Virus record (IMG/VR): IMGVR_UViG_3300045999_010033
Span: 124,001-188,000 of that record
Strand: one strand, 5' to 3'
Length of the DNA: 64,000 nucleotides
In this document: positions 2-63,895 of the stretch, one piece after another
How the letters are laid out: every line of letters starts with the position of its first letter
Numbering within the stretch: position 1 is the first letter of the stretch
Notes under the pieces: model-generated
Database searches by the model: none
What the model saw: the letters and a program-made list of their open reading frames with translations, nothing else
Told to the model about the DNA's origin: nothing
Translations under genes and position numbers: made by a program

Positions 2-328
2 ACTAAAATCGTTAAACCTGAAGGGAAGTCCCCATTCTTCAAAATATGCCCATTCGTAATCTATTCCACACGTTTGTAAGTAACGATTTCCATATACGAA
101 TGTATCTAACTTTACCCAATCTGAAATTTCAATCGAAAGACACGTATTGGCATCTATATGATTTTGGTTAATAATATATTCGTTACATTCAGTTCTAACG
201 TAGTAAAATGATATAGTTGTATTAAGTTCATGTTCAGTAGATGAAGACCATACTGGTACTATTAACTTTATTTTTTCTTTACTATCTGCTAACTGCTGCA
301 GCTGTGTATTTGATTCAATTAAAAACAT
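2..328 (-). CDS. 5' part of a gene running off the window edge; possibly the N-terminus of a family A DNA polymerase / 3'-5' exonuclease
   Basis: Not in the ORF track. Hand translation from ATG at 328 gives an open frame to the edge: MFLIESNTQLQQLADSKEKIKLIVPVWSSSTEHELNTTISFYYVRTECNEYIINQNHIDANTC... The product call is recalled similarity to PolA N-termini of related large phages and is weak. Confidence 0.45.
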   Translation of the reverse strand, partial: MFLIESNTQLQQLADSKEKIKLIVPVWSSSTEHELNTTISFYYVRTECNEYIINQNHIDANTCLSIEISDWVKLDTFVYGNRYLQTCGIDYEWAYFEEWGLPFRFNDFS

Positions 329-331
329 AAC

Positions 332-363
332 CAATTCTACAAAAAATTTTCGAATTTTCCAAA
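332..363 (-). promoter_or_regulatory. Bacteroidota-type -33/-7 promoter candidate
   Basis: Minus strand reads TTTG-N20-TAGAATTG, 3 nt before the ATG at 328; consensus is TTTG-N19-21-TAnnTTTG (one mismatch). Confidence 0.45.
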
Positions 364-738
364 TTACCCTTTGTGAAACTGTAAAAGGTTTGGCAAATAT
401 AAGGAAATATTTTTTAATTGAGAACTCGCTATCGATATTGATGATTTGTTTGATGCAATCACACCTCTATCCGATAATTCCCCATCTTTGTATATGGATT
501 CAGTTGGTCCGGATATTCTCCATTGTATTTGCAATACTTTCCAAAATGGATTTGTTTCATAAATTGTAAATTCATTTTCTGAAACTTCGAATATAAATGA
601 GTTTTCATCGTTTGCTTTTTGAATGAAAAAACGATTTATAAACCCAATAGAGTAATCATCATCGGTTGGATTTGGTACAATGGTTTTTGGTACTTTTAAA
701 GTAAAATTTTCAATATTTTTTGCTATATTTTTGTACAT
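364..738 (-). CDS. hypothetical protein (124 aa), probably baseplate-associated
   Basis: Tightly coupled ORF 1 nt after the hub gene stop; no recognisable motif. Confidence 0.75.
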   Translation of the reverse strand: MYKNIAKNIENFTLKVPKTIVPNPTDDDYSIGFINRFFIQKANDENSFIFEVSENEFTIYETNPFWKVLQIQWRISGPTESIYKDGELSDRGVIASNKSSISIASSQLKNISLYLPNLLQFHKG

Positions 739-12668: not shown

Positions 12669-13235
12669 TTATAAACATCCTGTTACGTAAACTACATATA
12701 AATATTGTCCAACATTAGAATCATAAGTATAATCGTATTGATATGTTGCATTTAAGCTGGTTATTCCAACACTAGATGTTACTAATGTAGAAATAGACGC
12801 GGTATATTGACTTCCATCGTTTTTCCACGGTTTACCATAGTATACTTCTAAATCTCCGGCAGTAGCAACACTACCTGATATATTAATATCAATTAAACCA
12901 TTTTCAGTTCCTAAATCAATAATTACCATTGTTTTTGAATAGCAGTAATCCGATATGTGATATAAAGATGCAGTATTTTGAGATAATGTGTAAGCGCTAT
13001 GGTCATAATCGTACCAATAAGACATTGAGTAATTGAGGCTGTTTGGAGAATTAAATTTTCCTTCGGGAAGTGATATTCCTCCTACGTTTATTGGTGCGTA
13101 TATGTTTGTAGCAGATAACGCCCAATTATTAAGTGCCAACAAAGAACCTTGCAACTCATAATTATTAACTAAACTTTGAGATGTTTCGGTTCTCACCATA
13201 CTCATAGAAATAGGACCACTAGACGGTAAAGCCAT
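12669..13235 (-). CDS. putative fibre-tip accessory protein (188 aa)
   Basis: N-terminus MALPSSGPISMSMVRTE resembles small proteins that follow S74-chaperone fibres; overlaps the fibre gene end by 17 nt. Confidence 0.6.
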   Translation of the reverse strand: MALPSSGPISMSMVRTETSQSLVNNYELQGSLLALNNWALSATNIYAPINVGGISLPEGKFNSPNSLNYSMSYWYDYDHSAYTLSQNTASLYHISDYCYSKTMVIIDLGTENGLIDINISGSVATAGDLEVYYGKPWKNDGSQYTASISTLVTSSVGITSLNATYQYDYTYDSNVGQYLYVVYVTGCL

Positions 13236-33019: not shown

Positions 33020-36000
33020 TTATATTGTTCTAATTATGAATTTGCCAGTCCAAGTTCCTGCTGATGCAGAACCTGTCATTACCATATTTGACCCGGATAT
33101 TATTGATGTAAAGGCTACGCCTGATGTGTTTCCAAAATCAACCGTAGATACATCACTAACAACAGTTGATGCCCCAGACCACATCGCTATAAATTGTCCC
33201 ATTCTTGCATTAGAACCACTCCTAATTGTGTATTCAACAAACATTCCATCGTAAGAACCGGTACTCATACTATAAATTGTAGTTGAACCTGTTATAGATA
33301 CACGCTTAGTTGTATTCAATACGGGTGCAATACTATCTCCCATCAATACCGTATCATCCGAAAATACTTCCAATATCGGAAGACCCGAAATATCATTCAC
33401 AGAGAATAGTGAACCCGAAAGGTTATCAGTAACTGAAAATAGTTCACCTTGGCTGCCTAATACACTAAATATAGATTGAGAAGAACCTGAACCATGTATG
33501 ATTGCACGTTGTACTCCGGAGCCGGATACTAATAGTGTGGATGATGTAAGTGATGTTGCAATTACGCTACCCGTTACATTTAATACACTACCATTAAAAT
33601 TAAGATTTGCTTCCGCAACTGCACTATTTACACTACCATCCGATGTTAATACTCTATTATCTGCAGGTGTCGCTATTGTGGTAAATCCGGTACCACTTGT
33701 TCCTGCAGTTCCGCTGCTTCCTGCTGTCCCGCTGCTGCCACTACTGCCGGTTGAACCGCTACTTCCACTGCTTCCTGCTGTCCCGCTGCTGCCACTACTG
33801 CCGGTTGAACCGCTACTTCCACTGCTTCCTGCTGTCCCGCTGCTGCCACTACTGCCGGTTGAACCACTACTTCCACTGCTTCCTGCCGTGCCGCTGCTGC
33901 CACTACTTCCAGCGGTTCCGCTACTGCCGCTGCTACCGGTTGAACCACTACTGCCCGCACTACCACTGCTTCCTGCAGTTCCGCTGCTTCCGCTACTACC
34001 GCTTGTTCCCGAAGAACCTGCTGTCAATAGATTTGTTCCTACACCTGCTGCTGCTTCTGTTAAATCTATATATGCACCCCTTGCTGCACCTCCTTGTTCA
34101 AAAAATCTTAATTTATTTTGATAAGAATCGATAGTTATACCACTACCAGTGAGTGAGTTATTAGTAGCTGATTTATTTAGTAATATTTCACCACCCTCGT
34201 CACCCGATTGATATAATATACTTAATTTAGTACCATCAAATGTTAAAAGTGATTCTGCGTTCGCTTCCCCTTGAGTTCCCGTTGCGGTTAATATTCTATC
34301 ATTAGCATTGTTTAATATGTTTGCAACACCACTCGTACCGCTGCTTCCGCTGCTTCCTGCAGTTCCGCTGCTGCCACTACTGCCGGTTGAACCGCTACTT
34401 CCACTGCTTCCTGCAGTTCCGCTGCTGCCACTACTGCCGGTTGAACCGCTACTTCCACTGCTTCCTGCAGTTCCGCTGCTGCCACTACTGCCACTGCTTC
34501 CTGCTGTCCCGCTGCTGCCACTGCTGCCGGTTGAACCGCTACTTCCACTGCTTCCTGCAGTTCCGCTGCTGCCGCTACTGCCGGTTGAACCACTGCTTCC
34601 GCTACTTCCACTGCTTCCTGCCGTCCCCGATGTGCCCGAAGTTGCTGCAGTATAAGATGTACCGTTTATTATCAGTGAACCGGATATACTAACAGAGCCG
34701 GTAAATTGATGTGTATTTGATACCAATGTTCCGAATTGTGTGGAACCGGTAATCAATTCGGTCGAAGAAGTAATAATTTGCGAAACTATTCTTTGTGCAA
34801 CTAATGTATCTCTTACCGTAAAGTTATCCGCAGAAGATGCGGTTAGCGCCAGTACCGCGAGTGATGCGGTTTGTGCAAATGATGCGGATGTGGCATTAAG
34901 TGGTGTACCATTTATCCAAACCCCACCATTGTAAACTAATGCCTGTCCATTTGTAGGAGTTGTAATATTTACATCCGATAAATCATCCAGAGTTTGTGTT
35001 ATATTTGTAGCAGCTGAAGACCCACCCGATGTATTTCTAAAAGAACCCGCTTGTATAAAAATTGCTTGTGATGTATTTGTTAAATCACTAGCATTTCCCT
35101 GAACTAATAGGTATCCCGCAAAAATTAATGATTTAGCGGTAAACTCACCTTCTACAAAACTATCAGAAAGTAACGCAGATAAAGCGTTTGCTATTGATGT
35201 ATATGAATTATGTCCGTAGTATATTACTGCACGCTTAGATTCGGGACTATAAAATATTCTTTGAATAGTAACGTTAGGACCAGATACACTTGATAATCCA
35301 TTTCCGTTATCATATTTTGTAGGATCCACTACGGTGTAATAGTTGCCATTATTACTGTCCAAATATATTCCAGATCCAGTTCTATACGCCCTAGCCATAG
35401 ATGCAGTAAGAGCAGGTGTAGCAGTATAATGTGATGGACTATTAGGATTTTGTGAATAATATCCACCTAAAAAGAATCCCGTACCATCTCCTATATTGAT
35501 TCTTAGCGAACCACTTTGGCCCGATGGTGTGAATCCATTTACTTTTATCGGTCCGAATGACCTAATAAAATCATTTTGTTGTGTATCACTATTATATGTA
35601 GTTTGTACACTACTTGCGTATCCTGTTATACTTGAATAGTTTGGATGTGTAACTAATCCAAGAGGTATTGCCTCCTCGTATTGAGTTTCATCAAAATAAG
35701 AAGTTTGTTGGAAGATTACTCCTGTCCCATCAACGTATAAATAAGTCGTTTGTGATGAAGTTATGTATTGTGCAGATGCAGTATAATCATTCCAATTAAC
35801 GTAAGTAATAATAGGATTGATTTCCGACCCGCTGGTGGCATTCATATTATTAATGATACCACTACCTTTTTTAACATATATTACACTGCCACTAAAAGAA
35901 ATACCTCCACCATATAATATTCCCGAACTTAATCCACCTTCTAACCATTTGAATTTGGTTAAGTTACCATTTTGACGATAATATAAATCATATCCGGTAG

Positions 36001-39000
36001 CTGTGTTAGAAGCAGATGTAAATAAGTACGATGCAGTTATGTTATTGGGTCCTGGATCTTGACCTGGATCTAATCTTAAATGTCCTTGTAATGTAAAGTT
36101 AGCAGTTGCATTTAATGATCCAGATACATTAACACTACCCGATAGTACACTTATTCCTATTAAGGTATTAGACCCACTTGTTATTAAACTACCGGTAACT
36201 ATTTGGTTTCCTACACTAACTGATGTTCCTATAAATGTCTGAGACCCCGATACGTTTATGCTGCCGGTTATGGTTTGCGTTCCTATAATCGTACTTGAAC
36301 CCGTCAATCCATAAGAACCCGTTAATTGTTTAGAGTTTATCCAAACACTACCACTTCTAACTAAAAGGTCTCCCGATGTTATTCCATTAATTTTAACATC
36401 ATGCAGTTCATCTAATTCGTAACCATTATCTATTTTTACATATATCGAACCAACAGTCGCACTTACTCTTTCTACATATCCTAGTCTAACGGAATGTAGT
36501 GGCGCTTGTGGTGTGGTTTGTGTGTATTGTCCTGCCGAACTACTTAAATATACAAGTCCGCCGGCAGTTAATCCTAATGTGTTTAATTCATTGAGTGGAC
36601 CTTCGGTTTGTACGAATCCCTCCTCTCCCGAAAGTATTTGTTCTGCTACAAATCCTAATGTATTTGCCGAACCCAATTCAGCTGTCGCAGACGCACGTTT
36701 TACTGAAACACGATTTCCTTGTGAACCAAAAATATAAACTACAGTTCCTTTTGTTAATGTTGTCGCTTCTGCGTTAAATGCACGTATGAATAATTCTTCA
36801 CCAATTGCCAAGTTTACATTTCCACCTTTCAGTCCGAGATTCAATGTTCCGTATCCATCATCCCACCCCAATCTACCTTCTGCCTTTGGTTGGTCAGAAC
36901 CGGTAACAAAATTAATTACACTTGCGTTATTAATTGAGCCTGATATTTGAAGATTTTCAGAATACGATGCGGACACCGCTCGTAATGCCCAACTTGCAGT
37001 ACCATATAATGAGCTTGTAATATTTGTCGCATTTATAGACCCGGTTACATTTAAAACCGAACCATCAAATGTTAAGTTAGCTTCGGCATTAGCACTATTT
37101 GCACTACCATCCGATGTTAGTATTCGATTATCTAAAGGATTTGATATTGTATTAAATCCTGTACCGCTGGTGCCTGCACTTCCACTACTTCCTGCAGTTC
37201 CGCTGCTTCCTGCTGTCCCACTGCTTCCGCTGCTTCCACTGCTTCCTGCCGTTCCGCTGCTCCCTGCTGTCCCACTGCTTCCACTGCTTCCTGCCGTTCC
37301 GCTGCTTCCGCTGCTTCCATCGGTTCCGCTACTTCCACTGCTTCCTGCCGTTCCGCTGCTTCCGCTGCTTCCATCGGTTCCGCTACTTCCACTGCTTCCT
37401 GCCGTTCCACTGCTTCCGCTGCTTCCATCGGTTCCGCTGCTTCCACTGCTTCCACTGCTTCCATCGGTTCCGCTACTTCCACTGCTTCCTGCAGTTCCGC
37501 TGCTTCCACTGCTTCCTGCCGTTCCGCTGCTTCCGCTGCTTCCATCGGTTCCGCTGCTCCCTGCTGTTCCGCTGCTTCCACTGCTTCCTGCAGTTCCGCT
37601 ACTCCCTGCTGTCCCACTGCTTCCGCTGCTTCCGCTACTTCCATCGGTTCCGCTGCTTCCACTGCTTCCTGCCGTTCCGCTGCTCCCTGCTGTCCCACTG
37701 CTTCCGCTACTTCCATCGGTTCCGCTGCTTCCACTGCTTCCTGCCGTTCCGCTGCTTCCGCTGCTCCCTGCAGTTCCGCTGCTGCCGGTTGCTCCTACTG
37801 CTGCTATCCATTGAGTTCCATCCCAACGATATATGTCGGTATCGGATGTATTATAATATAAAGAGCCACTTTTGAATGAACCGGTCGGACTTGAACTATA
37901 ATTGGGTAATTTAAATTGCGTTTCTGCATCAATAGCAGATGCTGTCAAACTTCCTGAAAGTGAAAGTGAGCTTGTAAATATTATTGTATTTACATTTACA
38001 GAAAATTCAGCTCCACCCGATATAGATACTGATCCGGTAAATTGATGTAAATCACTCCCACTTACTCCGAATTTAGATGAACCCGTAACAAAACTGATAG
38101 ATGATGTAATAGTTTGGACATGTATTCTTTGAGCAACTATTGTATCACTAACATTTATCGAACCGGTTACCACTAATGTATTACCATCAAATGTTAAATT
38201 GGATTCGGCAACCGCAGTATTGGTAGTTCCATCCGATGTAAGTATTCTATTATTTGCTGGATTTGAAATTGTATTAAATCCTGTCCCACTCGTACCACTA
38301 CTTCCGCTGCTTCCGCTGCTTCCACTACTTCCTGCAGTTCCGCTGCTCCCTGCTGTCCCACTGCTTCCGCTGCTTCCATCGGTTCCGCTGCTTCCACTAC
38401 TTCCTGCAGTTCCGCTGCTTCCACTACTTCCTGCAGTTCCGCTGCTCCCTGCTGTCCCACTGCTTCCGCTGCTTCCTGCAGTTCCACTGCTTCCTGCAGT
38501 TCCGCTGCTTCCGCTGCTTCCTGCAGTTCCGCTGCTTCCTGCAGTTCCGCTGCTTCCTGCAGTTCCTGCCGCTGCTATCCATTGAGTTCCATTCCAACGA
38601 TATATGTTTGTATCACCTATATTATAATATAATGAACCGGTGCTAAATGATCCCGATGGGTTAGAGTTGTAAGTTGGTAAAGTAAATCCGGTTGCAGCAC
38701 CAATATAAGATGATGTGAAACTTCCACTAATTAACATTGAACCGGTAAAGGAAATACTATCAATATTTGCAGTGAACACATTCCCAACACTACCCGATAT
38801 ATTTATCGAACCAGTTACTTCGAGTCCTCCACTAATTTGAGTATTCGTGTTTACTTTGAATCCATATGCAGGGTCTACCGAGGCAGTAACACTGCCTGAT
38901 GATATTCTTGAAAGGTTTAATCCTACTACACTTGATGCGGATATGTTTGTTATTCCTGCACCATTTCCTATAAATGAACCAGAGAATGAACCACTAAATA

Positions 39001-39925
39001 TGCCATTACCGGTTTGCGCAAAAGATGCAGAATCGGACCAACTTGCAGTTCCATATACACGTTTGTTACTACTATCTACATATATGTCACCTCTAATATG
39101 GGTTTTAGTTATATTTGTGTTTCCAATTGTAGTCGTATTAGAACCTTTACCAATTGTGTTATATCCTATTACAATTTGATTGGTCTCCGAACTTGCGCTT
39201 GGTTTTGTATTTGCTCCAATAAAAACCGATTGATTAGAATCTATGTTGTTTCCTGCTTCAGCAGCCTTTCCGGCATTTACACCAACCGCGACGTTGTAAT
39301 CGCCCGTTTCCATAGCAATCAGTGCTTCAGACCCAATTGCTACATTGTAGTTTGTATAGCTAGATGAATGTAATGTATAAGACCCTATTGCAGTGTTACC
39401 ATCACCTGTGTTTTCATTTAATGCGTATGAGCCTATTGCTGTGTTTTGTTGTCCGGTATTTAGTGATAGTGCGTTATTACCAACTACGGTATTAGTTGTG
39501 AAACTTCCATCCCCACGGCCGATTCTGACACCATGTACATATATGTCGTTATTTGTAGTTAGTGAGCCAGAAACATCTACAGAACCACTAAATTGTGAAT
39601 TAAAATTTACCTTAAAGCCAAGTATAGAATCTACCGATGCGGTCACACTACCCGATGATATACTAGAAAGATTTAATCCAACTACACTCGATGCCGATAT
39701 ATTTGTTAATCCTGAACCGTTTCCAAAAAAGGAGCCGGAAAATGAGCCACTAAATGCAGATACCGTTGATCCAATCTCAATTATTTTTTCACCACTAGAA
39801 CCACTGGTTTTCATAAACAACTTACCATCGTAAGTGTTTATTGCCAATTCACCATAATCCAATGAAGATGTGGTTGGTACACGACCGGGTACTGCACTTC
39901 TACGCAGTTTTATTATTTGACTCAT
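33020..39925 (-). CDS. giant tail fibre (2301 aa) with four Gly-Ser/Thr blocks
   Basis: N-terminal IIKLRRSAVPGRVPTTSSLDYGELAINTYDGKLF fibre-anchor motif; NTAIG beta-helix-like repeats (~39280-39480); repeated shaft modules. Confidence 0.85.
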   Translation of the reverse strand: MSQIIKLRRSAVPGRVPTTSSLDYGELAINTYDGKLFMKTSGSSGEKIIEIGSTVSAFSGSFSGSFFGNGSGLTNISASSVVGLNLSSISSGSVTASVDSILGFKVNFNSQFSGSVDVSGSLTTNNDIYVHGVRIGRGDGSFTTNTVVGNNALSLNTGQQNTAIGSYALNENTGDGNTAIGSYTLHSSSYTNYNVAIGSEALIAMETGDYNVAVGVNAGKAAEAGNNIDSNQSVFIGANTKPSASSETNQIVIGYNTIGKGSNTTTIGNTNITKTHIRGDIYVDSSNKRVYGTASWSDSASFAQTGNGIFSGSFSGSFIGNGAGITNISASSVVGLNLSRISSGSVTASVDPAYGFKVNTNTQISGGLEVTGSINISGSVGNVFTANIDSISFTGSMLISGSFTSSYIGAATGFTLPTYNSNPSGSFSTGSLYYNIGDTNIYRWNGTQWIAAAGTAGSSGTAGSSGTAGSSGSSGTAGSSGTAGSSGSSGTAGSSGTAGSSGSSGTAGSSGSSGTDGSSGSSGTAGSSGTAGSSGSSGSSGSSGTSGTGFNTISNPANNRILTSDGTTNTAVAESNLTFDGNTLVVTGSINVSDTIVAQRIHVQTITSSISFVTGSSKFGVSGSDLHQFTGSVSISGGAEFSVNVNTIIFTSSLSLSGSLTASAIDAETQFKLPNYSSSPTGSFKSGSLYYNTSDTDIYRWDGTQWIAAVGATGSSGTAGSSGSSGTAGSSGSSGTDGSSGSSGTAGSSGTAGSSGSSGTDGSSGSSGSSGTAGSSGTAGSSGSSGTAGSSGTDGSSGSSGTAGSSGSSGTAGSSGSSGTDGSSGSSGSSGTDGSSGSSGTAGSSGSSGTDGSSGSSGTAGSSGSSGTDGSSGSSGTAGSSGSSGTAGSSGTAGSSGSSGSSGTAGSSGTAGSSGSAGTSGTGFNTISNPLDNRILTSDGSANSANAEANLTFDGSVLNVTGSINATNITSSLYGTASWALRAVSASYSENLQISGSINNASVINFVTGSDQPKAEGRLGWDDGYGTLNLGLKGGNVNLAIGEELFIRAFNAEATTLTKGTVVYIFGSQGNRVSVKRASATAELGSANTLGFVAEQILSGEEGFVQTEGPLNELNTLGLTAGGLVYLSSSAGQYTQTTPQAPLHSVRLGYVERVSATVGSIYVKIDNGYELDELHDVKINGITSGDLLVRSGSVWINSKQLTGSYGLTGSSTIIGTQTITGSINVSGSQTFIGTSVSVGNQIVTGSLITSGSNTLIGISVLSGSVNVSGSLNATANFTLQGHLRLDPGQDPGPNNITASYLFTSASNTATGYDLYYRQNGNLTKFKWLEGGLSSGILYGGGISFSGSVIYVKKGSGIINNMNATSGSEINPIITYVNWNDYTASAQYITSSQTTYLYVDGTGVIFQQTSYFDETQYEEAIPLGLVTHPNYSSITGYASSVQTTYNSDTQQNDFIRSFGPIKVNGFTPSGQSGSLRINIGDGTGFFLGGYYSQNPNSPSHYTATPALTASMARAYRTGSGIYLDSNNGNYYTVVDPTKYDNGNGLSSVSGPNVTIQRIFYSPESKRAVIYYGHNSYTSIANALSALLSDSFVEGEFTAKSLIFAGYLLVQGNASDLTNTSQAIFIQAGSFRNTSGGSSAATNITQTLDDLSDVNITTPTNGQALVYNGGVWINGTPLNATSASFAQTASLAVLALTASSADNFTVRDTLVAQRIVSQIITSSTELITGSTQFGTLVSNTHQFTGSVSISGSLIINGTSYTAATSGTSGTAGSSGSSGSSGSTGSSGSSGTAGSSGSSGSTGSSGSSGTAGSSGSSGSSGTAGSSGSSGSTGSSGSSGTAGSSGSSGSTGSSGSSGTAGSSGSSGTSGVANILNNANDRILTATGTQGEANAESLLTFDGTKLSILYQSGDEGGEILLNKSATNNSLTGSGITIDSYQNKLRFFEQGGAARGAYIDLTEAAAGVGTNLLTAGSSGTSGSSGSSGTAGSSGSAGSSGSTGSSGSSGTAGSSGSSGTAGSSGSSGSTGSSGSSGTAGSSGSSGSTGSSGSSGTAGSSGSSGSTGSSGSSGTAGSSGTAGTSGTGFTTIATPADNRVLTSDGSVNSAVAEANLNFNGSVLNVTGSVIATSLTSSTLLVSGSGVQRAIIHGSGSSQSIFSVLGSQGELFSVTDNLSGSLFSVNDISGLPILEVFSDDTVLMGDSIAPVLNTTKRVSITGSTTIYSMSTGSYDGMFVEYTIRSGSNARMGQFIAMWSGASTVVSDVSTVDFGNTSGVAFTSIISGSNMVMTGSASAGTWTGKFIIRTI
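33690..34020 (-). repeat. (Gly-X-Y)n Ser/Thr block
   Basis: 9-nt tandem repeats including near-exact longer units; boundaries approximate. Confidence 0.95.
34325..34640 (-). repeat. (Gly-X-Y)n Ser/Thr block
   Basis: GTAGSSGSSGSTGSSGSS units; boundaries approximate. Confidence 0.95.
37160..37798 (-). repeat. (Gly-X-Y)n Ser/Thr block with GTD units
   Basis: GTDGSSGSSGTAGSS units; boundaries approximate. Confidence 0.95.
38280..38570 (-). repeat. (Gly-X-Y)n Ser/Thr block
   Basis: GTAGSS units; boundaries approximate. Confidence 0.95.
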
Positions 39926-44069: not shown

Positions 44070-45704
44070 TTAGAGAGTATGTAGACCCTCAACCACAATC
44101 TTGCCATAGAATTCCGGACGGACTATCTTCTTAGCGTATCTCGTCATAACTCCACGACGTGGTGTGAAGTTAGTCGGGTCATACACAAGCGGAGTCATAA
44201 TCAAAGGCACATATGGTGCGTAGACAGCTCCAGTTTCGAAGAAGTTAGAACCTTTGAAACCAAGAAGGATAACGTTCTCAGTCATGTATGGGTTTTTGTA
44301 AACATCATACCTGTTAGAGATTGAACCTACATTGGTTACACCAGCTGCAAATTGAAGAGCATCTTTACCAGGGTTAGCTGAGAAGCCATTCATTGATTCG
44401 AGGATAGTACATACATCCGGGCTAGCCACGATGAAGTTTGCACCACCACGCATTGTCAACTGATGGATTTTGTTTGATACCTTTTGAAGTTTGATACCAA
44501 GTGTTTGATACCAAGTGTTCTTTTGGTAAGCGTTTGCAGATATAGTAGCAGAATCAGGTGCGAAAAGACCGGTTGTTGAATTGTAGTCGTATCCTACTCT
44601 TGCAGACCAGTAATCAGTAGTCAATGCGTTAGCCTGAAGCATCTCAAGAATTTCCAAATCAATCTCAAGAGAGATGTATTCAGAAAGCATCTGAGTCAAT
44701 TCAGCTTCTGCGTCGATACTGTGGTATGCGTTAAGGTCTTGCGCCAATTCAGGAGTCCAAACTGCTTTCAACTTACGAGTTTTAGCAACGATTGGTTCTG
44801 ATTTGAGTTCAAGCTCAATTTCAGGAATACCAACATCAGCACCAGTTCTATCTTCAAAATCACCTCTTGAAGTAGCGGTTGGTTGTTTGTGATAAGATAC
44901 TGTTGCAGTTGCACCATCGGAAAGGAATGCAGCAGTAGATCCAGTTACAAAGAATTCAACAAAGTTTCCGTTGATATTTGTGTATTGTGGATATAGTGTG
45001 ACAGAGCCAGATGTAAGTACAAACGCTCTAACACCATTGAAATCCATTTCGGAAAGAATTGATGAAGATACTGCTACCTTCTTAATACCACCTGCTGCAA
45101 CGGATGCTGAAAGTGCGTTTGAATAATCGGTATCTGCCCAAGATGCACTTGTTACAGTTACTCCTGCACCTATACTTCCTGTACCGATTGTTACACTAAC
45201 ATCGTTGATGGAATATCCGAAACGACCAGGGCCATAAAGACCTTCTTCTGCTACTTGAGTAGAACCAAGTTTGTTACCTGCAGGTGAAAGAGAATCTTTA
45301 CCAACGGTACCACCTTTACCGAACATTGAAGAACCAGAGAATGCTGGCTTACCTGCTTGGTCGGTTGAATACTTGAAGTCCATGTAGAAGATAAGACCTG
45401 AAGGTAAGTTCATCGGCTGTACAGAAACGAATTCTTTTGCAGCGATGCTACCAAAGATACGTCTTACAAGCGGAAGAGCTACACCTGCCCATTCTTCAGA
45501 ACCAGCTGCGAAGCCAGTCTTTGTTGCTTCATCAAGAAGCTGCTTAGCTTGGTTTTCAAGCAATACTGCCATACCATGCTTTTGTGATTCAGAACCTGCT
45601 CCTTCAAGAAGGCCTGTTTTTTCCCATTTGGATTTCAAACCCCTAGTTTGCTCAAGCATAATGCTTTGCGGGTTTGCACCATTCATTAATTTTTTTAAGT
45701 CCAT
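44070..45704 (-). CDS. gp23: major capsid protein (T4 gp23-like), 544 aa
   Basis: Start moved to MDLKK (45704). ALPLVRR, FVSVQPMNLPSGLIFY, AKTRKLKAVWTPELAQDLNAYHSIDAEAEL, YAPYVPL, PRRGVMTRYA. Confidence 0.95.
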   Translation of the reverse strand: MDLKKLMNGANPQSIMLEQTRGLKSKWEKTGLLEGAGSESQKHGMAVLLENQAKQLLDEATKTGFAAGSEEWAGVALPLVRRIFGSIAAKEFVSVQPMNLPSGLIFYMDFKYSTDQAGKPAFSGSSMFGKGGTVGKDSLSPAGNKLGSTQVAEEGLYGPGRFGYSINDVSVTIGTGSIGAGVTVTSASWADTDYSNALSASVAAGGIKKVAVSSSILSEMDFNGVRAFVLTSGSVTLYPQYTNINGNFVEFFVTGSTAAFLSDGATATVSYHKQPTATSRGDFEDRTGADVGIPEIELELKSEPIVAKTRKLKAVWTPELAQDLNAYHSIDAEAELTQMLSEYISLEIDLEILEMLQANALTTDYWSARVGYDYNSTTGLFAPDSATISANAYQKNTWYQTLGIKLQKVSNKIHQLTMRGGANFIVASPDVCTILESMNGFSANPGKDALQFAAGVTNVGSISNRYDVYKNPYMTENVILLGFKGSNFFETGAVYAPYVPLIMTPLVYDPTNFTPRRGVMTRYAKKIVRPEFYGKIVVEGLHTL

Positions 45705-58262: not shown

Positions 58263-58918
58263 TATTTTTTCAATTTTATTTTCCAGTAAACTGAACCATT
58301 TACATATGGTGTGATTGTAGAGCCATTTTGTAATCCAACACCTAATCCAAATATTTTATTTTTTGGAGTTTGGTACATTAGACTTAATCCAATCGTATTT
58401 GGTAATTGGTTTTTTGTAAATCCACCATTTATTCCGAAATACAAAGTTGAAGTTGGTACCGGAGTTAACCACGTTGTATCGTGAATTTCTTTTTGATTGA
58501 TATTAGATAAATATGTTCTATACCAAATACGATTTTCTTTTATAGTATCAGTTAAAGTTACATATCCCAATGAATCTTTTAATTCAAGTGTATCAATAGA
58601 AACTTTCTTTGCAAAATAGTCTTTAAGAATTTCTGCGGTATCCACATTTTCATATTGAACCGCAGTATCGTATTCAACTATAAATGTGTATATTTGTTCT
58701 TTACTACGATATTCAGTAAAACGATTTGGAATGTATTTAGTACTTGTTGTTTTTTTATTTACTTTATAAAGTTCTCCATCAATTACAACCGTATTTGATT
58801 TATCATATTTAGATTGTTGACATTGCATAAATGTCAAAAAAATTAAGAATATAACAAGTAATACTCCTTTCCAATCGAGTAGTGATTTGAAATTAAAATT
58901 TAACGATGAGTTCGGCAT
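58262..58918 (-). CDS. membrane-anchored protein (218 aa); spanin-like candidate
   Basis: N-terminal TM helix GVLLVIFLIFLTFMQC; C-terminal amphipathic beta strands ending YVNGSVYWKIKLKK. Confidence 0.55.
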   Translation of the reverse strand: MPNSSLNFNFKSLLDWKGVLLVIFLIFLTFMQCQQSKYDKSNTVVIDGELYKVNKKTTSTKYIPNRFTEYRSKEQIYTFIVEYDTAVQYENVDTAEILKDYFAKKVSIDTLELKDSLGYVTLTDTIKENRIWYRTYLSNINQKEIHDTTWLTPVPTSTLYFGINGGFTKNQLPNTIGLSLMYQTPKNKIFGLGVGLQNGSTITPYVNGSVYWKIKLKK

Positions 58919-59570
58919 GATTTAGTTTAATAAATTCTTCTTCTAATAATCGTTTTCTTTCTATTAATAATTCTATCACTTCTCCCGCATCGGTTACTTC
59001 TTGCTCTAAATCTGCTTTTACTTTATTTATATCAATATCCCACGTCCATTTTTGTAAAGAACCATCTTCCATAACAATAGTAAAATCATCTTTTACTGAT
59101 GCCAATGCTTCTTCAAATCTTTGCTTCATTTCTTTTGAAAACGCTAATTTATTACGAGTTAGTTTGTAATCAACATATAAATCATAAACACCATCAATTC
59201 TCAATTGTGTTTCAAATTCAGCAAGGCAATTAATACATTTGCCAGTTTTCCTCAATACCTTTTTATCGGCATGGGAATACTTAATTGTTTTACAACTTTC
59301 GTTTGAGCAAGTGTTTAGTTTTTGTAGATATTGTCTTACATCATCAAAATCCGAAACTGATTCTTTGAATCCATCTTGTTGCTTCCATGTCTTTCCATCC
59401 TTATCGGTCCAAACTTCTCCAACTTCTCTTTTTACAATTTCTTCTTTTTCTCCATCATAACCAAATACTCTTTTTGTATTATCTTCTCTACCGAAAACGG
59501 TATCAATTATTTTTTTACGAGATTTGTGAATGTACTTGTTTTTTTCATCCCAACTTTTCCTTTTTTGCAT
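58893..59570 (-). CDS. hypothetical protein with Cx4C-x16-Cx2C zinc-finger-like motif (225 aa)
   Basis: CSNESC...CINC; KREVGEVWTDKDGKTWKQ motif; upstream of terminase. Confidence 0.75.
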   Translation of the reverse strand: MQKRKSWDEKNKYIHKSRKKIIDTVFGREDNTKRVFGYDGEKEEIVKREVGEVWTDKDGKTWKQQDGFKESVSDFDDVRQYLQKLNTCSNESCKTIKYSHADKKVLRKTGKCINCLAEFETQLRIDGVYDLYVDYKLTRNKLAFSKEMKQRFEEALASVKDDFTIVMEDGSLQKWTWDIDINKVKADLEQEVTDAGEVIELLIERKRLLEEEFIKLNHAELIVKF

Positions 59571-59599: not shown

Positions 59600-62500
59600 T
59601 TATTCATAAAATATTCCTAAAAGCTGATTTAATGGAGCGAATGTGCCTGTAAGTTTATAAGTCTTTCCGTTATAAACAAATACAATACCTTCTGCTGCTA
59701 CTATTTTATCTACCCCACCCAATGAGTTTAATCTTTCTAATTCGTTTTTGAATTTTTTAATTATAGATGTGTCTCCGGTTTGTTTTACTTTTTGTGCAAC
59801 TGAATCCAATTTCGTTTTCATAGCACGAATGGCAGTATCGGGGTGCACAGTTATTACTGATGTTACAAATTGTAAAACTTCAGAACCTACTCCCAAAAAT
59901 ATTTCTTCAAACGGTTTTATATTATCACGTTGTTGTTTTGGAACATTTATCTTATCGTGCTCTATTGTCCAATTTTGCAATGTTTTATCTGATATTGTAT
60001 TTAACCTAAAAGATTTTTCTCCAAATCCCCATCTGCGGATTAGTGCTTCTTTTGTAAGTTTATCGGGCTTAACGGGTGATTGCTTATCTATAAAATCTGC
60101 CCACCATGCGTAGTGATAATCCGAAACGGAAGCAGAATCAGAAAGTCCAAATTTAGATTGTAGTTTGTTTAATTTTCCAAACCAATATCCTTGCTTCGAT
60201 GAAAGCTCTTTACTTTTTGGAAGTTCTAAAACCGGAGGACCTGCTATCGTATATTTGGATTGCACATTTGCGTTGATTTGTTTTATCATGCCTGCCAATA
60301 CTCTTGCGCTAGATTGGTCGGCGCTTATTGCCTTACCCGCATCATCATAACACACCGTTCCATGAAATACTAATAATGCCTGTCCGTATGGTATTACGTT
60401 TACTGATTCTGGCCATATAACTTCAAGATTCATAAAACATTTCCCATTATTAAATATCTTTTCTTTTTGTTTTTCTGAAAGCCCACCTATTGCGGCGTTA
60501 AGGTCTTTCATTGCAAAATTATACGCATCGGTTAATCCACCACGACCTGCAAATTTAGATGCTACATCTTCTATACCCATTGCGTTTGCTCCTGCATTTG
60601 CAAGATGTCCTTTGTTACGTGCGGCAATCAATCTTCCATTCTTCCAACTTATTGCCAAAGCCTGTCCGTCGGTTTTTTCACGAGCCAATTCCAAACGACC
60701 ACTTAGTGCGCCAGATATAATACGTTTAAGGTCACCAAACGTAAGCCCCATATCATCAAATGGATGTGACATGTGTCCATACGCACCACCTTCTTGTAAT
60801 AGAGAAACTATACGATGCTCATATCCTCTTTCACGAATTACATCAACCGGTCTAATTGCCTTTGGTTTTACATATACATCTGGATAAGAGTATGGGTTTG
60901 GTCTTGAATTAAATGGATACATTTCCCATTTATCTGCTTTATCTTTTGCATATGCATCTCCTTTAGATGGATGAATTGTACGTTTAGCAGGTCCGTTTTC
61001 CTCTCTTGGATTATTAACCGGTATATTTTTTGCTGCCTTTTTAGCATCACGTTTTGAACTATATTCTAATACATCATATCCTACTATTTCAGCGTGCTTT
61101 TTTCCATATTTATCGTGCTTTTCCCAATCAGGAGAATATGGAGATCTGAAACTTTCCCCATTACTTGTCCCATCTACTACGGCTTCATTTACAAAATTCT
61201 TTTTATTGAATTTAGTTGGTTTAAAATCAGTACGTGGTAAGTTCTTAACACGCCAAATTACATATGGTTGGTCTTGCTCATCATCACCGAATATAGTATC
61301 CGCAGTTGGGAAATCAATTTGAATATATCCGCCATTAGTAAACCACTCATCGGATTTATTTATACCATCATTGTTACCCAATTTTCTTTTATATCCTTTT
61401 GGTAAAAACATACCATCGGGTTGGTCATCATTAAATGCACCCTGAATACTTGTTGCTTCGTTTATAATTCCCTCTTGGAATATCTTTTTATTAATCTTAC
61501 CATATTCACGCATTAGTATTCCGGCCACCGCATGGGCTTTATTTTCAACAGAAGAGCCAGTCTTACCATCCTCTGCCCTATCTTTAATAATGCCCATTTC
61601 ATCTTGCTTACGATGTACCATTTCATGCGCAATCGTTCTTAAAATATCGGCAGTTAGGCGACCTTCGGTTGAAACGAATATTTCTTTTGTATTATCATCG
61701 TATCCACCAAGAGATGTTTGTGATTCTGCGAACTCACCACCACCTACTAAATTGATTTTAGGTCTTTCATTTAGTTTCAATCGCTTTGTAGCATATTCAA
61801 CGAAATGATTTATTGATTCGGTTTTACTATCCAATGCATCTTCGGTTTCTCCGGTTTCGGGATTGTGATGTGAAAACGTTTTGTGCCAAATTTTAGATTT
61901 TTCTATTGCCCTTGCAGGATTAAGTTTATCTATTTTTTGTTGTGGTGATAATCTTCTATTAAACATTCCGGTAGCAGGAACATAATGTTCTTCATTCAAT
62001 AAATCTGCTGCGTTTCTTTTTGGTTCTTCTTTTTTATAACTTTTTATAGATTGTAATAATTGCGCATCGGTTAATTTGTATGTTTCTACACGTTTAATAA
62101 CTTTTTCTAAAAAGTTTATTATAAATTTATTGTTACCATCTTGGGTTGATGAAATTTCGAACAAACCCATTGTTGCAGTAGATAGTGCCGCACCACCACC
62201 CGCTGCTTGCGCACCACCAAATCCCAATGTTTCAAGTGCAGCATGCTTCACAATATCTTTTCCCAAATGAATACCAAACCCACCAAATCCATGTGTAAAA
62301 ACACCAACTGAACCTTGTGCTGCTGCACTTGCAACTCCTAACGCACCTTGACCAGCGCTAACCGCTTTGGCCGCCGCTACACCTGCGCCACCTAACATCA
62401 TAGACCCCATTAACAATCCAACATCAATTGCAAAATGTTTGACATGATGTAATTGTTCTTTTCGTTTTTCATCGGAATAATCCCACTTTCCGGTTTGCTT

Positions 62501-63895
62501 ATTTTTTACAGAACCAATCTTTTGTCCATTAGCCAATGCTTTAACTGCATCAACAGTTCCACCAATCATTTCTTTTTTGTGATGCGCCCACTTTTTTATT
62601 CCTTTACCAAAACCTTTAATGGCAGATTTTAATCTGGTCATCATTCCTTTTCTCTCCGGTGATTGTGGATTATTTATTTGTTCTATTGTTTTAGTTTCTT
62701 CATCAGATAACTTACTTTTTTCCGAATCCAATTGAGTTTTAATTTCTTCTTTTTCTTTTTCTGATTCCGGCTTTTCGGCATTTGTTTTAAAATCAGAACC
62801 TGATAGTTTATTAGGGTCTTCAGTTGGCTCTTCTGCTCCTGTCGTTTTTGGCTCTGAATCACTTGTGGGCTTTTCTGAAGCCGGTTTCTTTTCTTGATTG
62901 GTAGAGGCAGATGGTTCTTCTTTTGATGATGTCTTTTTATCTTTGCCAGTAAGCTTTTCTGCCTCTACGTGAGCTGGATGATCTTTGGCTAATCTAAGAG
63001 CTGCTCTTACTTTTATTTTTTTCTTTTCTCCTGCGGCGTTTGTATATTCAATTTCTTTATCCATTATAGGATTTTCCGATTCTGCCTCACCTAAATAATT
63101 TGAAATAAAATCATTAAATATATCTTCGGCGGCAGCTCTTTCTATAATTGAAAAAATTGGATTGTATAATTCTGTCTCATCAATTGTTCTAAATGTAGTT
63201 GCCTGCTTTCCGTTTATGGTTGGCATTCCATGAGAATCTGATGATATATCTTTTACTTTCACCTTTTTGTTTTTGAATTTACCCATAAGAACGTTATCTC
63301 CGACATCAACTCCTACTTTAATATTTTCACCGATTAATCGTTTTCTAATTAGGTCAAAAATACCTTTATCAAATTTTGAATATACTTTTTTAAAGTATTC
63401 TATGGCAGTTTTTTCATCTGCGCCACCAATATTTTTTCTTACATCAGTTCCACTAATTGCTTCTGCTTGTGGCGGCACTAAATACGTGTATCCAATTTCT
63501 TTATAACCATAGCCCGCTTTACCACGATATGGTTTAAAATATGAACCACCTAATCTTTCTGCATCTTTTTCTCCAACTGCTGCAACGTATTGTGTAGTAT
63601 CGGCATCAAACTTACTTAATATTTCAACTGGATTGTATGGATTTTTAACCATAACAAATCTATTAGCTGGAATATCAAACATTGTAGTTGCTATCTTTTT
63701 CTTTTCTTTAAAGTTAAAAGGAGATTTAGGTTGGGAAGTCGTATTTGAAGACCCAATGAAAACGTTACCAGCACCAAACTTACTAACTAAATTTTTATAT
63801 GCTGCATAATGCCCTTTGTGGAATGGTTGAAATCTACCACTATATACTACTATTGTTTTTTTTACTTTTGGTTTATCTACTTCTGTTATATTCAT
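59600..63895 (-). CDS. 1431-aa multidomain protein: HIGH-motif nucleotidyltransferase, Gly/Ala-rich hydrophobic region, HEXXH metallopeptidase, C-terminal KxDG ligase-like domain
   Basis: YSGRFQPFHKGH and ISGTDVR; IAHEMVHRKQ; EGGAYGHMSHPFDD, EKTDG, EGIV, YKLTG. Confidence 0.8.
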   Translation of the reverse strand: MNITEVDKPKVKKTIVVYSGRFQPFHKGHYAAYKNLVSKFGAGNVFIGSSNTTSQPKSPFNFKEKKKIATTMFDIPANRFVMVKNPYNPVEILSKFDADTTQYVAAVGEKDAERLGGSYFKPYRGKAGYGYKEIGYTYLVPPQAEAISGTDVRKNIGGADEKTAIEYFKKVYSKFDKGIFDLIRKRLIGENIKVGVDVGDNVLMGKFKNKKVKVKDISSDSHGMPTINGKQATTFRTIDETELYNPIFSIIERAAAEDIFNDFISNYLGEAESENPIMDKEIEYTNAAGEKKKIKVRAALRLAKDHPAHVEAEKLTGKDKKTSSKEEPSASTNQEKKPASEKPTSDSEPKTTGAEEPTEDPNKLSGSDFKTNAEKPESEKEKEEIKTQLDSEKSKLSDEETKTIEQINNPQSPERKGMMTRLKSAIKGFGKGIKKWAHHKKEMIGGTVDAVKALANGQKIGSVKNKQTGKWDYSDEKRKEQLHHVKHFAIDVGLLMGSMMLGGAGVAAAKAVSAGQGALGVASAAAQGSVGVFTHGFGGFGIHLGKDIVKHAALETLGFGGAQAAGGGAALSTATMGLFEISSTQDGNNKFIINFLEKVIKRVETYKLTDAQLLQSIKSYKKEEPKRNAADLLNEEHYVPATGMFNRRLSPQQKIDKLNPARAIEKSKIWHKTFSHHNPETGETEDALDSKTESINHFVEYATKRLKLNERPKINLVGGGEFAESQTSLGGYDDNTKEIFVSTEGRLTADILRTIAHEMVHRKQDEMGIIKDRAEDGKTGSSVENKAHAVAGILMREYGKINKKIFQEGIINEATSIQGAFNDDQPDGMFLPKGYKRKLGNNDGINKSDEWFTNGGYIQIDFPTADTIFGDDEQDQPYVIWRVKNLPRTDFKPTKFNKKNFVNEAVVDGTSNGESFRSPYSPDWEKHDKYGKKHAEIVGYDVLEYSSKRDAKKAAKNIPVNNPREENGPAKRTIHPSKGDAYAKDKADKWEMYPFNSRPNPYSYPDVYVKPKAIRPVDVIRERGYEHRIVSLLQEGGAYGHMSHPFDDMGLTFGDLKRIISGALSGRLELAREKTDGQALAISWKNGRLIAARNKGHLANAGANAMGIEDVASKFAGRGGLTDAYNFAMKDLNAAIGGLSEKQKEKIFNNGKCFMNLEVIWPESVNVIPYGQALLVFHGTVCYDDAGKAISADQSSARVLAGMIKQINANVQSKYTIAGPPVLELPKSKELSSKQGYWFGKLNKLQSKFGLSDSASVSDYHYAWWADFIDKQSPVKPDKLTKEALIRRWGFGEKSFRLNTISDKTLQNWTIEHDKINVPKQQRDNIKPFEEIFLGVGSEVLQFVTSVITVHPDTAIRAMKTKLDSVAQKVKQTGDTSIIKKFKNELERLNSLGGVDKIVAAEGIVFVYNGKTYKLTGTFAPLNQLLGIFYE

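What the first reader, a model, noticed from the sequence alone, without database searches (positions are those of the whole stretch)
59603..60800. C-terminal domain has covalent nucleotidyltransferase (ligase/capping) motifs
Seen: EKTDG (motif I, KxDG, ~60665-60680), FMNLEVI (motif III-like), EGIV (motif IV, ~59685) and YKLTG (motif V-like), after the conserved start EGGAYGHMSHPFDD. Established: these motifs define ATP-dependent DNA/RNA ligases and capping enzymes; T4 Rnl1 repairs tRNA cut by PrrC. Inference: a virion-borne ligase-like enzyme, possibly for nucleic-acid repair against host nucleases.
Basis: partly seen in the sequence, partly recalled or inferred. Interest (0 to 1): 0.6.

Follow-up and report, generated by a model that had tools for sequence, protein, structure and literature searches.

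The report
Unrecognised phage RNA-ligase-like enzyme domain
The last 400 residues of a 1431-residue jumbo-phage protein are a previously unrecognised, very widespread viral family with the fold and invariant active-site residues of ATP-dependent RNA/DNA ligases, split by a helical insert and usually fused to an NMN-adenylyltransferase-like domain; its substrate is unknown.

Summary
All four motifs lie at the stated coordinates in the C-terminus of a 1431-aa ORF (window 59600-63895, minus strand) of a 221-kb phage.

- **Conservation:** across 57 diverse relatives, the motif I Lys/Asp/Gly, motif III Glu, motif IV Glu-Gly and motif V Lys are invariant.
- **Sequence scans:** Pfam, PHROGs, NCBIfam and PDB sequence searches do not recognise the domain.
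- **Architecture:** the nucleotidyltransferase core is interrupted by a helical insert of about 180 aa between motifs IIIa and IV. There is no OB domain.
- **Inteins:** two relatives carry inteins exactly between the K and T of KTDG.
- **Family size and partner:** there are at least 1846 clusters at 50% identity, all viral. The domain is usually fused to, or next to, an HxGH adenylyltransferase (NMNAT-like fold). DUF6267 of T4-like cyanophages is a distant structural relative with the same partner.

The phage already has a canonical DNA ligase, an Rnl1 and an Rnl2. The function is therefore probably distinct from theirs. "Ligase-like" is supported. "Virion-borne" and "repair" remain untested.

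The parts
59600..63895 (-). Whole ORF of 1431 aa (P0001). Order of parts: N-terminal HxGH adenylyltransferase, variable middle region, C-terminal ligase-like domain.
63341..63874 (-). N-terminal HxGH (cytidylyltransferase-like / NMNAT-like) nucleotidyltransferase domain, aa 8-185. It carries HKGH (aa 26-29, 63809-63820) and ISGTDVR (aa 147-153, 63437-63457).
   Evidence: PF01467 E 1.9e-5 over its cut-off. phrog_395 E 1.2e-14. Model pLDDT 91. Nearest PDB folds are NMN/NaMN adenylyltransferases and PPAT, E ~1e-5, TM 0.5-0.6. Invariant G, R, F, P, H, T and R columns in 40 relatives.
63188..63316 (-). Small beta-rich module, aa 194-236 (VGVDVGDNVLMGKFKNKKVKVKD...INGKQATTFR). A near-identical module sits at a different place in the homologue of L003.
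   Evidence: sequence inspection only
61613..61627 (-). HEMVH (HExxH) motif, aa 757-761, inside a module shared with the closest relatives (HE[ML]VH). Possibly a zincin-type metallopeptidase; not verified.
   Evidence: Weak phrog_6361/16532 hits at E 0.04-0.05. The Atlas feature search gave a lead to IrrE/Peptidase_M78-like viral proteins at score 0.88.
59603..60808 (-). C-terminal ligase-like covalent nucleotidyltransferase domain, aa 1030-1431 (model residue n = protein residue n+1029).
   Evidence: Model pLDDT 93, pTM 0.88. Fold hits. Family of >=1846 clusters at 50% identity.
60752..60793 (-). Conserved domain start EGGAYGHMSHPFDD, aa 1035-1048. G1037 and H1041 are invariant; H1044 and P1045 are nearly so. 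Role unknown.
60665..60679 (-). Motif I EKTDG. K1074 (60674-60676) is the predicted nucleotidyl-accepting lysine. It sits in the turn between two beta-strands of the model.
   Evidence: Invariant K, D and G. DSSP strands 40-45 and 49-56. Inteins are inserted between K and T in L003 and P0225.
60617..60619 (-). R1093, in AARNKG, is the motif Ia candidate.
   Evidence: Invariant. Assigning it to motif Ia is an inference.
60416..60436 (-). Motif III FMNLEVI. E1158 is invariant and lies on a beta-strand.
59699..60241 (-). All-helical insert of ~180 aa (aa ~1219-1399) between motif IIIa and motif IV. It is a candidate substrate-recognition module.
   Evidence: DSSP helices at model residues 200-368. 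Ligase alignments cover ~180-200 residues spread over model 6..402.
59681..59692 (-). Motif IV EGIV. E1402 and G1403 are invariant and lie on a beta-strand.
59645..59659 (-). Motif V-like YKLTG. K1414 is invariant. The second lysine of the canonical KxK is not conserved.

Best explanation
The C-terminal ~400 aa (aa 1030-1431) are an active member of the covalent nucleotidyltransferase superfamily, of the RNA-ligase structural type. They belong to a large, phage-only family that has no database model.

**Inferred mechanism, from the superfamily:**
1. K1074 attacks the alpha-phosphate of ATP and forms a lysyl-AMP. E1158, E1402 and K1414 line the nucleotide pocket.
2. AMP passes to a 5'-phosphate polynucleotide end.
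3. A 3'-OH attacks and seals the break.

The ~180-aa helical insert between motifs IIIa and IV takes the place of the appended helical or OB domains of known ligases. It probably selects the substrate. RNA (possibly tRNA) is the likeliest substrate.

The enzyme works together with an HxGH, NMNAT-like adenylyltransferase. That partner is fused at the N-terminus here, fused at the C-terminus in S-PM2, and encoded by the neighbouring gene elsewhere. The partner's chemistry is unknown.

**What is shown:** the motifs, their invariance, the fold, the domain association and the synteny. **What is inferred:** adenylylation, the nucleic-acid substrate and sealing. My probability that the site is an active Lys-NMP-forming one is about 0.85. 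My probability that it is a polynucleotide (RNA) ligase is about 0.5-0.6.
For: - **Motifs:** they are at the stated positions, and K1074, D1076, G1077, E1158, E1402, G1403 and K1414 are invariant in 57 and in 54 relatives.
- **Model:** the AF2 model has pLDDT 93. Motif I lies in a beta-hairpin turn and motifs III, IV and V lie on strands.
- **Foldseek against PDB:** the top 34 rows listed are all RNA/DNA ligases (Trl1, Rnl1, Rnl3, Rnl2 and others), with probability up to 0.97 but E only 2e-3.
- **VIA-align:**
  - All 50 top entries of the second look are ligases.
- **Pfam:** 11 of 57 members hit PF09414 RNA_ligase weakly and 4 of 57 hit PF01653.
- **Inteins:** a split intein (L003) and a contiguous mini-intein (P0225) sit exactly between K and T of KTDG. 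From general knowledge, inteins favour catalytic sites.
- **Fusion with a CCA-adding enzyme:** one relative, P0167, fuses the domain to a PolyA_pol/CCA-adding-type module (E 8.5e-31), with a stand-alone CTP_transf gene next door.
- **Link to the HxGH domain:**
  - 40 of 54 long cluster representatives carry it.
  - 49 of 52 IMG/VR loci have it upstream on the same strand.
  - S-PM2 has it in the reverse order fused to DUF6267.
  - S-SZBM1 has the two as adjacent genes.
Against: - No sequence method reaches significance against known ligases. Pfam, PHROGs, NCBIfam and PDB phmmer/hmmsearch give nothing for this protein. hhalign against a T4 Rnl2 profile gives ~1% probability and aligns only motif I.
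- I could not inspect a residue-level superposition, because model coordinates are not exposed.
- Motif V has one conserved lysine, not KxK.
- The same genome already has a DNA ligase, an Rnl1-type and an Rnl2-type ligase. A plain ligase role would therefore be redundant.
- No end-healing (kinase/phosphatase) domain is fused.
- Two clusters (P0228, P0241) lack the motif I region altogether.
Confidence: 0.6

Rival explanations
1. It is a DNA ligase. It would seal nicks in replicating DNA, or in DNA about to be packaged, since the gene lies just upstream of the terminase. Its DUF6267 relatives would then be the DNA ligase that T4-like cyanophages appear to lack.
For: - The KxDG form of motif I is typical of DNA ligases and Rnl1 (own knowledge).
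- S-PM2 and S-SZBM1 have no PF01068, PF01653, PF09414 or PF09511 match but do carry DUF6267. It lies in the replication module, between gp41/MazG and gp61.
- Gene order ligase-like gene, small ORF(s), TerL holds in 50 of 55 loci.
- Mel-JY01 also lacks a PF01068 ligase.
Against: - This phage has a canonical PF01068 DNA ligase (E 1.2e-18).
- There is no OB domain or motif VI; the protein ends 17 aa after motif V.
- One relative is fused to a CCA-adding-type RNA enzyme.
Confidence: 0.15
2. It forms a Lys-NMP but is not a strand-joining enzyme. Instead, together with the NMNAT-like domain, it would transfer a nucleotide to a 5' end or another acceptor. Possibilities include cap-like or NAD-linked RNA 5' modification, use of NAD+ as the AMP donor with NMN recycled by the fused domain, or protein/small-molecule AMPylation.
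For: - The coupling to an HxGH adenylyltransferase is obligatory-looking. That domain's nearest folds are NMN/NaMN adenylyltransferases, and its NCBIfam best hits are NMNAT models, though far below cut-off.
- Weak hits to the NAD-dependent ligase adenylation domain PF01653 occur in 4 of 57 members and in Mel-JY01.
- The genome already has three canonical ligases.
- Motif V is non-canonical.
Against: - No NMN-binding domain Ia and no capping-type OB domain is present.
- The NMNAT-like assignment rests on a generic fold (TM 0.5-0.6), and PPAT scores equally well.
- There is no direct evidence for any alternative acceptor.
Confidence: 0.2
3. The motifs are a relic or a coincidence. The domain would be a structural or scaffolding part of a large virion protein with no catalysis.
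For: Two clusters lack the motif I segment (P0228, P0241). No sequence model recognises the domain.
Against: All predicted catalytic residues are invariant across sequences down to 38% identity and across >=1846 clusters. Stand-alone ~414-aa versions exist. Inteins target motif I.
Confidence: 0.05

Closest known systems
Rnl5-type RNA ligase (Naegleria gruberi NgrRnl, PDB 5cot/6vtf) and the Rnl2/REL1 group (T4 Rnl2 1s68/2hvq, TbREL1 1xdn; Pfam PF09414)
   Different: No significant HMM or profile match. Motif I is KxDG, not KxHG. A ~180-aa helical module is inserted between motifs IIIa and IV. There is no N-terminal OB-like domain (Rnl5) and no C-terminal PF18043 domain (Rnl2). Only one lysine is conserved in motif V.
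T4 RNA ligase 1 (gp63; PF09511) and the fungal Trl1 ligase domain
   Different: In Rnl1 and Trl1 the helical domain follows motif V. Here it is inserted before motif IV. There is no PF09511 match in this ORF. The genome has a separate true PF09511 gene at G000 44890-45450.
DUF6267 (PF19782) of T4-like cyanophages, e.g. S-PM2d138 and SSZBM1_141
   Same: Predicted structures are similar (Atlas TM 0.64-0.71; Foldseek BFVD E 5.9e-6 to the S-PM2 protein). By eye, the S-PM2 sequence shows the same motif pattern: HLEHLEDE start, TKWDG, and EGFV followed by KAVKIV. It has the same partner, an HxGH cytidylyltransferase-like domain.
   Different: PF19782 does not match this genome at E<=0.01. hhalign finds only the motif IV/V stretch, and not significantly. 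In S-PM2 the domain order is reversed. The cyanophage gene lies in the replication module, not next to the terminase.
Polyvalent proteins of phages (Iyer et al. 2017, PMC5512222)
   Same: The protein is long and has several unrelated modules, low-complexity linkers and an HExxH module. It is encoded beside late/virion genes. The middle part varies strongly between relatives, with 0.9-4.6 kb between the two end domains.
   Different: The HExxH module is not verified as an MPTase. No MuF/portal anchor domain was found. A text search of that paper finds no ligase-superfamily or HxGH domain described as a polyvalent module. Injection into the host is not shown.

Membership tests
Covalent nucleotidyltransferase superfamily (ATP/NAD+ ligases, capping enzymes) | Motif I KxDG/KxxG with the nucleophilic lysine | tested here: met
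   EKTDG at aa 1073-1077. K, D and G are invariant in 57 and in 54 relatives.
Covalent nucleotidyltransferase superfamily (ATP/NAD+ ligases, capping enzymes) | Motif III acidic residue and motif IV EG on beta-strands | tested here: met
   E1158, E1402 and G1403 are invariant. They lie on model strands 124-131 and 374-379.
Covalent nucleotidyltransferase superfamily (ATP/NAD+ ligases, capping enzymes) | Motif V with two lysines (KxK) | tested here: inconclusive
   K1414 is invariant. The second position is T/x (YKLTG), and K1411 is not conserved.
Covalent nucleotidyltransferase superfamily (ATP/NAD+ ligases, capping enzymes) | Nucleotidyltransferase fold | tested here: met
Covalent nucleotidyltransferase superfamily (ATP/NAD+ ligases, capping enzymes) | Formation of a covalent lysyl-NMP | not testable with these tools
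   Needs a labelling assay with the wild type and K1074A.
Rnl2/Rnl5 (PF09414 RNA_ligase) | Match to the family model over its cut-off | tested here: not met
   No hit for this protein at E<=5. There are 11 of 57 weak hits, best E 0.0045. hhalign against the T4 Rnl2 profile gives ~1% probability.
Rnl1 (PF09511) | Family model match, and a helical tRNA-binding domain after motif V | tested here: not met
   No PF09511 hit in this ORF; the genome's only hit is elsewhere. The protein ends 17 aa after motif V.
ATP-dependent DNA ligase / mRNA capping enzyme | C-terminal OB domain with motif VI | tested here: not met
   There is no sequence after motif V that could hold an OB domain. PF01068 matches a different gene of the genome.
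DUF6267 (PF19782) | Match to the family model | tested here: not met
   No match in G000 at E<=0.01. The resemblance is structural and motif-level only.
HxGH nucleotidyltransferases (PF01467), for the N-terminal partner domain | HxGH and ISxT motifs, Rossmann-like fold, model match over the cut-off | tested here: met
   PF01467 scores 25.3 bits against a cut-off of 21. HKGH and ISGTDVR are present. The fold matches NMNAT, NadD and PPAT.
Polyvalent proteins (PMC5512222) | Zincin MPTase hub domain plus disparate effector domains, with delivery alongside the DNA | tested here: inconclusive
   The HExxH motif and the variable architecture are present. The MPTase fold was not tested, and delivery cannot be tested here.

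The most novel reading that the evidence does not exclude
This family and DUF6267 together form a new branch of polynucleotide ligases. It would work as an obligate pair with an NMNAT-like adenylyltransferase. One version of this reading is a ligase whose nucleotide cofactor (for example NAD+) is made or regenerated on site, so that the phage can seal nucleic acids even when host defences deplete NAD+ or ATP. In T4-like cyanophages, which show no canonical ligase, it would be the long-missing DNA ligase.
Probability: 0.15. Interest if true: 0.85.

Novelty: new variant of a known kind. Interest (0 to 1): 0.66.

Why it matters
Ligases are among the best-studied phage enzymes and are core tools of molecular biology. 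Here a family with at least 1846 clusters at 50% identity, all from uncultured tailed phages, has gone unrecognised. Its members are annotated as 'hypothetical' or, because of the fused partner, as 'cytidylyltransferase'.

It shows a new way of building a ligase: the accessory module is inserted inside the nucleotidyltransferase core. It is also persistently coupled to an NMNAT-like enzyme, which no known ligase has.

If the distant DUF6267 relatives are also active, they would be a candidate for the DNA ligase that the two cyanomyoviruses checked here lack. The family could also yield enzymes with new end specificities.

Tried and rejected
- **Sequence recognition of the C-domain.** Pfam, PHROGs, NCBIfam and PDB phmmer found nothing. 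An hmmsearch of the family profile against PDB returned only lysine-rich chance hits to ribosomal eS6.
- **Profile-profile comparison.** hhalign against T4 Rnl2 alone and against a 24-sequence Rnl2 alignment gave ~1% probability, with only motif I (REKTDGQ / REKIHGTN) aligned. This is inconclusive. The Rnl2 alignment was shallow (>=55% identity), and the insert breaks colinearity.
- **hhalign against the S-PM2 DUF6267 sequence.** Only motif IV/V aligned, and not significantly.
- **'Missing DNA ligase of this phage'.** Rejected for this genome, which has PF01068, PF09511 and PF09414 genes elsewhere.
- **CCA-adding enzyme in this genome.** None found.
- **Literature.** No paper in the library mentions DUF6267 or Mel-JY01, and the term searches turned up no description of this family as a ligase.
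- **Use of the large representative search.** I ran it only after the family scans and the word search had left the domain unnamed.
Full report
**What is there.** The finding lies in the C-terminus of one long ORF, window 59600..63895 on the minus strand, 1431 aa. The window is bases 124001-188000 of a 221-kb IMG/VR phage record.
- Downstream on the same strand come two small ORFs, a large terminase, a portal and a major head protein.
- Upstream, beyond the window, lie a tail-fibre gene with a Peptidase_S74 chaperone, a fused Mre11/Rad50-like gene, a primase and an endonuclease I.

**Is it more than chance?** Yes.
- The word search found at least 1705 relatives of the 412-aa C-terminal piece, many of them stand-alone proteins of about 414 aa.
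- The exhaustive search found 1846 cluster representatives at 50% identity with E<=1e-3, and 593 with E<=1e-30. The domain sits at or near the C-terminus of nearly all of the 150 listed proteins, which are 277-1930 aa long.
- In 57 domain sequences at 38-74% identity to the query, the invariant columns are G1037, H1041, F1053, K1074, D1076, G1077, R1093, F1148, G1151, E1158, Y1170, Q1212, E1402, G1403, K1414 and G1417 (model numbering plus 1029).
The catalytic columns stay invariant in 54 full-length proteins.

**Fold.** No sequence method names the domain: Pfam, PHROGs, NCBIfam, PDB phmmer and a family profile against PDB all fail. An AlphaFold2 model built on the 57-sequence alignment is confident (pLDDT 93, pTM 0.88).
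- Motif I lies in the turn between strands 40-45 and 49-56.
- Motif III lies on strand 124-131.
- Motifs IV and V lie on the two last strands, 374-379 and 382-386.
- Residues ~200-368 are all helical.
- Foldseek against the PDB gives weak E-values (from 1.9e-3), but its top 34 rows are all ligases: Trl1, T4 Rnl1, Rnl3, Rnl2, then DNA ligases.
- VIA-align over 48,161 representative chains, which does not depend on Foldseek, ranks as follows:
  - DNA ligases at 5-7 and capping enzymes at about 5.
- In the second look, all 50 top entries are ligases:
  - Rnl1 reaches 8.7.
- The aligned residues (~180-200) are spread over model residues 6-402. So the nucleotidyltransferase core is made of residues ~6-190 plus ~371-398, and the helical block is an insertion between motif IIIa and motif IV.
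- At sequence level, 11 of 57 members give weak PF09414 (RNA_ligase) hits and 4 give PF01653 hits.
- hhalign against T4 Rnl2 and against an Rnl2 profile aligns only motif I, at about 1% probability. Membership in any named RNA-ligase family is therefore not met.

**Independent pointer to the active site.** Two relatives carry inteins at exactly the same place.
- In the metagenomic contig L003, a homologue with the same overall architecture is a 'fractured' gene:
  - the first ORF ends ...LELTREK followed by an intein N-part (CIAGDTII...);
  - a free-standing 249-aa ORF follows;
  - the next ORF starts with an intein C-part (...NDILVHN) followed by TDGQALAISW.
- P0225 has a contiguous mini-intein at the same place (...AQEK|CIDGDS...ILVHN|TDGQ).
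- Both inteins sit between the K and the T of motif I. Inteins favouring catalytic sites is general knowledge, so this is supporting evidence, not proof.

**The partner domain.** Residues 8-185 match PF01467 over its cut-off and phrog_395. They carry HKGH and ISGTDVR.
- The model has pLDDT 91. It is closest to NMN/NaMN adenylyltransferases, with PPAT close behind, at E ~1e-5 and TM 0.5-0.6.
- The link between the two domains recurs in four arrangements:
  - fused N-to-C, as here: 40 of 54 long cluster representatives and 49 of 52 IMG/VR loci with enough upstream sequence;
  - compact two-domain proteins such as Mel-JY01 WWT39297, 639 aa;
  - neighbouring genes (L005);
  - the reverse order in the distant DUF6267 relatives (next section).
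- The distance between the two domains varies from about 0.9 to 4.6 kb among close relatives. The ends are the constant parts and the middle is a variable cargo region.

**Distant relatives.**
- The ESM-Atlas shape search links the model to clusters carrying PF19782 (DUF6267) at TM 0.64-0.71.
- Foldseek against BFVD links it to the S-PM2 'cytidyltransferase-like' protein at E 5.9e-6.
- S-PM2d138 (591 aa) is DUF6267 (E 2.8e-113) followed by an HxGH domain.
- By eye, its sequence shows the same pattern: HLEHLEDE start, TKWDG, and EGFV followed by KAVKIV.
- In S-SZBM1 the DUF6267 gene (_141) directly precedes the cytidylyltransferase gene (_140).
- In both cyanophages the genes lie among replication genes: gp43, UvsX, gp41, MazG and gp61/primase.
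- PF19782 does not match this genome, so this is a sister family, not the same one.

**What the genome already has.** G000 carries three canonical ligase genes outside the window:
- a DNA ligase (PF01068, E 1.2e-18);
- an Rnl2-type ligase (PF09414, E 5.5e-25);
- an Rnl1-type ligase (PF09511, E 1.5e-20).

The domain studied here is thus a fourth ligase-superfamily protein. That argues for a distinct task and against simple 'tRNA repair like T4 Rnl1'. S-PM2 and S-SZBM1 have none of the four canonical families. Mel-JY01 has only an Rnl1-type gene.

**Hints on the substrate.**
- One cluster (P0167, 916 aa) fuses a PolyA_pol/CCA-adding-type module (E 8.5e-31, plus its RNA-binding domain) to the ligase-like domain. 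A stand-alone CTP_transf gene lies just upstream, and TerL and portal lie downstream.
- RNA ligases outrank DNA ligases structurally, and there is no OB domain.
- I therefore favour an RNA substrate, at moderate confidence.

**Is it virion-borne?** This is not shown.
- For:
  - the gene order ligase-like gene, 225-aa ORF, (218-aa ORF), TerL, portal holds in 50 of 55 related loci, which means late-gene surroundings;
  - the protein has low-complexity linkers, a Gly/Ala-rich hydrophobic stretch (aa ~488-580) and an HExxH module, as described for injected 'polyvalent proteins' (PMC5512222);
  - the cytidylyltransferase of S-SZBM1 was detected at low level in purified particles (PMC9146016).
- Against:
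  - the DUF6267 protein of that phage is not listed in that proteome;
  - the cyanophage genes lie in the replication module;
  - the 80 IMG/VR loci are close relatives (>=59% identity), so the synteny counts are not independent events.

**Verdict.** The domain is a new, abundant, phage-specific branch of the covalent nucleotidyltransferase superfamily, with an unusual internal helical insert and a persistent NMNAT-like partner. Substrate, cofactor and biological role remain open. 'Virion-borne repair enzyme' is one possibility among several.

Noticed in passing
L003:839-7176 (ENA ERZ28593435 scaffold_94): The homologue is a 'fractured gene'. It has an N-extein plus N-intein ORF, a free-standing 249-aa ORF (likely a homing endonuclease) and a C-intein plus C-extein ORF. 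The split lies between K and T of motif I. The terminase of the same contig also carries an intein (PF14890, weak).
   Followed up: partly
P0225 aa 753-877; P0228 and P0241: P0225 has a contiguous mini-intein at the same K|T site. In P0228 and P0241 the domain lacks the whole GHM...KTDG segment, and the HxGH domain runs straight into ...LVAARNKGH. These may be inactive variants or deletion products.
   Followed up: partly
L003:839-5221 and P0225 aa ~630-675: An HNH-endonuclease-like motif (EFHLDHKYS...HYKN...) lies in the extein just upstream of the ligase-like domain in some relatives. It is absent from the window's protein.
   Followed up: no
window 63188-63316 (aa 194-236): A small beta-rich module (VDVGDNVLMGKFKNKKVKVKD...GMPTINGKQATTFR) follows the HxGH domain here. 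In L003 it sits after the HExxH module, so it appears to be a shuffled cassette.
   Followed up: no
window 61300-62000 (around aa 757-761): An HEMVH motif lies in a module shared only with the closest relatives. It may be a zincin peptidase, as in polyvalent proteins. Support is limited to weak PHROG hits and an Atlas lead to IrrE/Peptidase_M78-like proteins.
   Followed up: partly
window ~62150-62430 (aa ~488-580) and ~62640-62980 (aa ~307-418): There is a Gly/Ala-rich hydrophobic stretch (possible membrane-active or glycine-zipper segment), preceded by a K/E/S/T-rich low-complexity linker.
   Followed up: no
G000:C1 41312-41875, 29955-30494, 44890-45450 (outside the window): The same phage encodes a canonical ATP-dependent DNA ligase, an Rnl2-type RNA ligase and an Rnl1-type RNA ligase.
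   Followed up: partly
L008/L009 (S-PM2 LN828717 93485-95260); L012 (S-SZBM1 OL473597 80389-82670): Neither T4-like cyanophage has a match to PF01068, PF01653, PF09414 or PF09511. Both carry DUF6267 fused or adjacent to a cytidylyltransferase-like gene inside the replication module. DUF6267 is therefore a candidate for their missing ligase.
   Followed up: partly
L006:4456-7599 (G000 ~191956-195099, upstream of the window): A single 1047-aa ORF combines a Metallophos (Mre11-like) domain with SMC_N/SbcC (Rad50-like) domains. This looks like a fusion of the gp47- and gp46-type recombination nuclease subunits.
   Followed up: no
window 58893-59570 (225-aa ORF): A Cys-rich (zinc-ribbon-like) ORF directly follows the ligase-like gene in nearly all 80 related loci and precedes TerL. 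It has no family match and may be the small terminase or a partner protein.
   Followed up: partly
window 13219-17403 and 33020-39925: Two very long ORFs (1394 and 2301 aa) lie in stretches where GC rises to 0.45-0.52, against ~0.30-0.35 elsewhere. I did not examine them.
   Followed up: no
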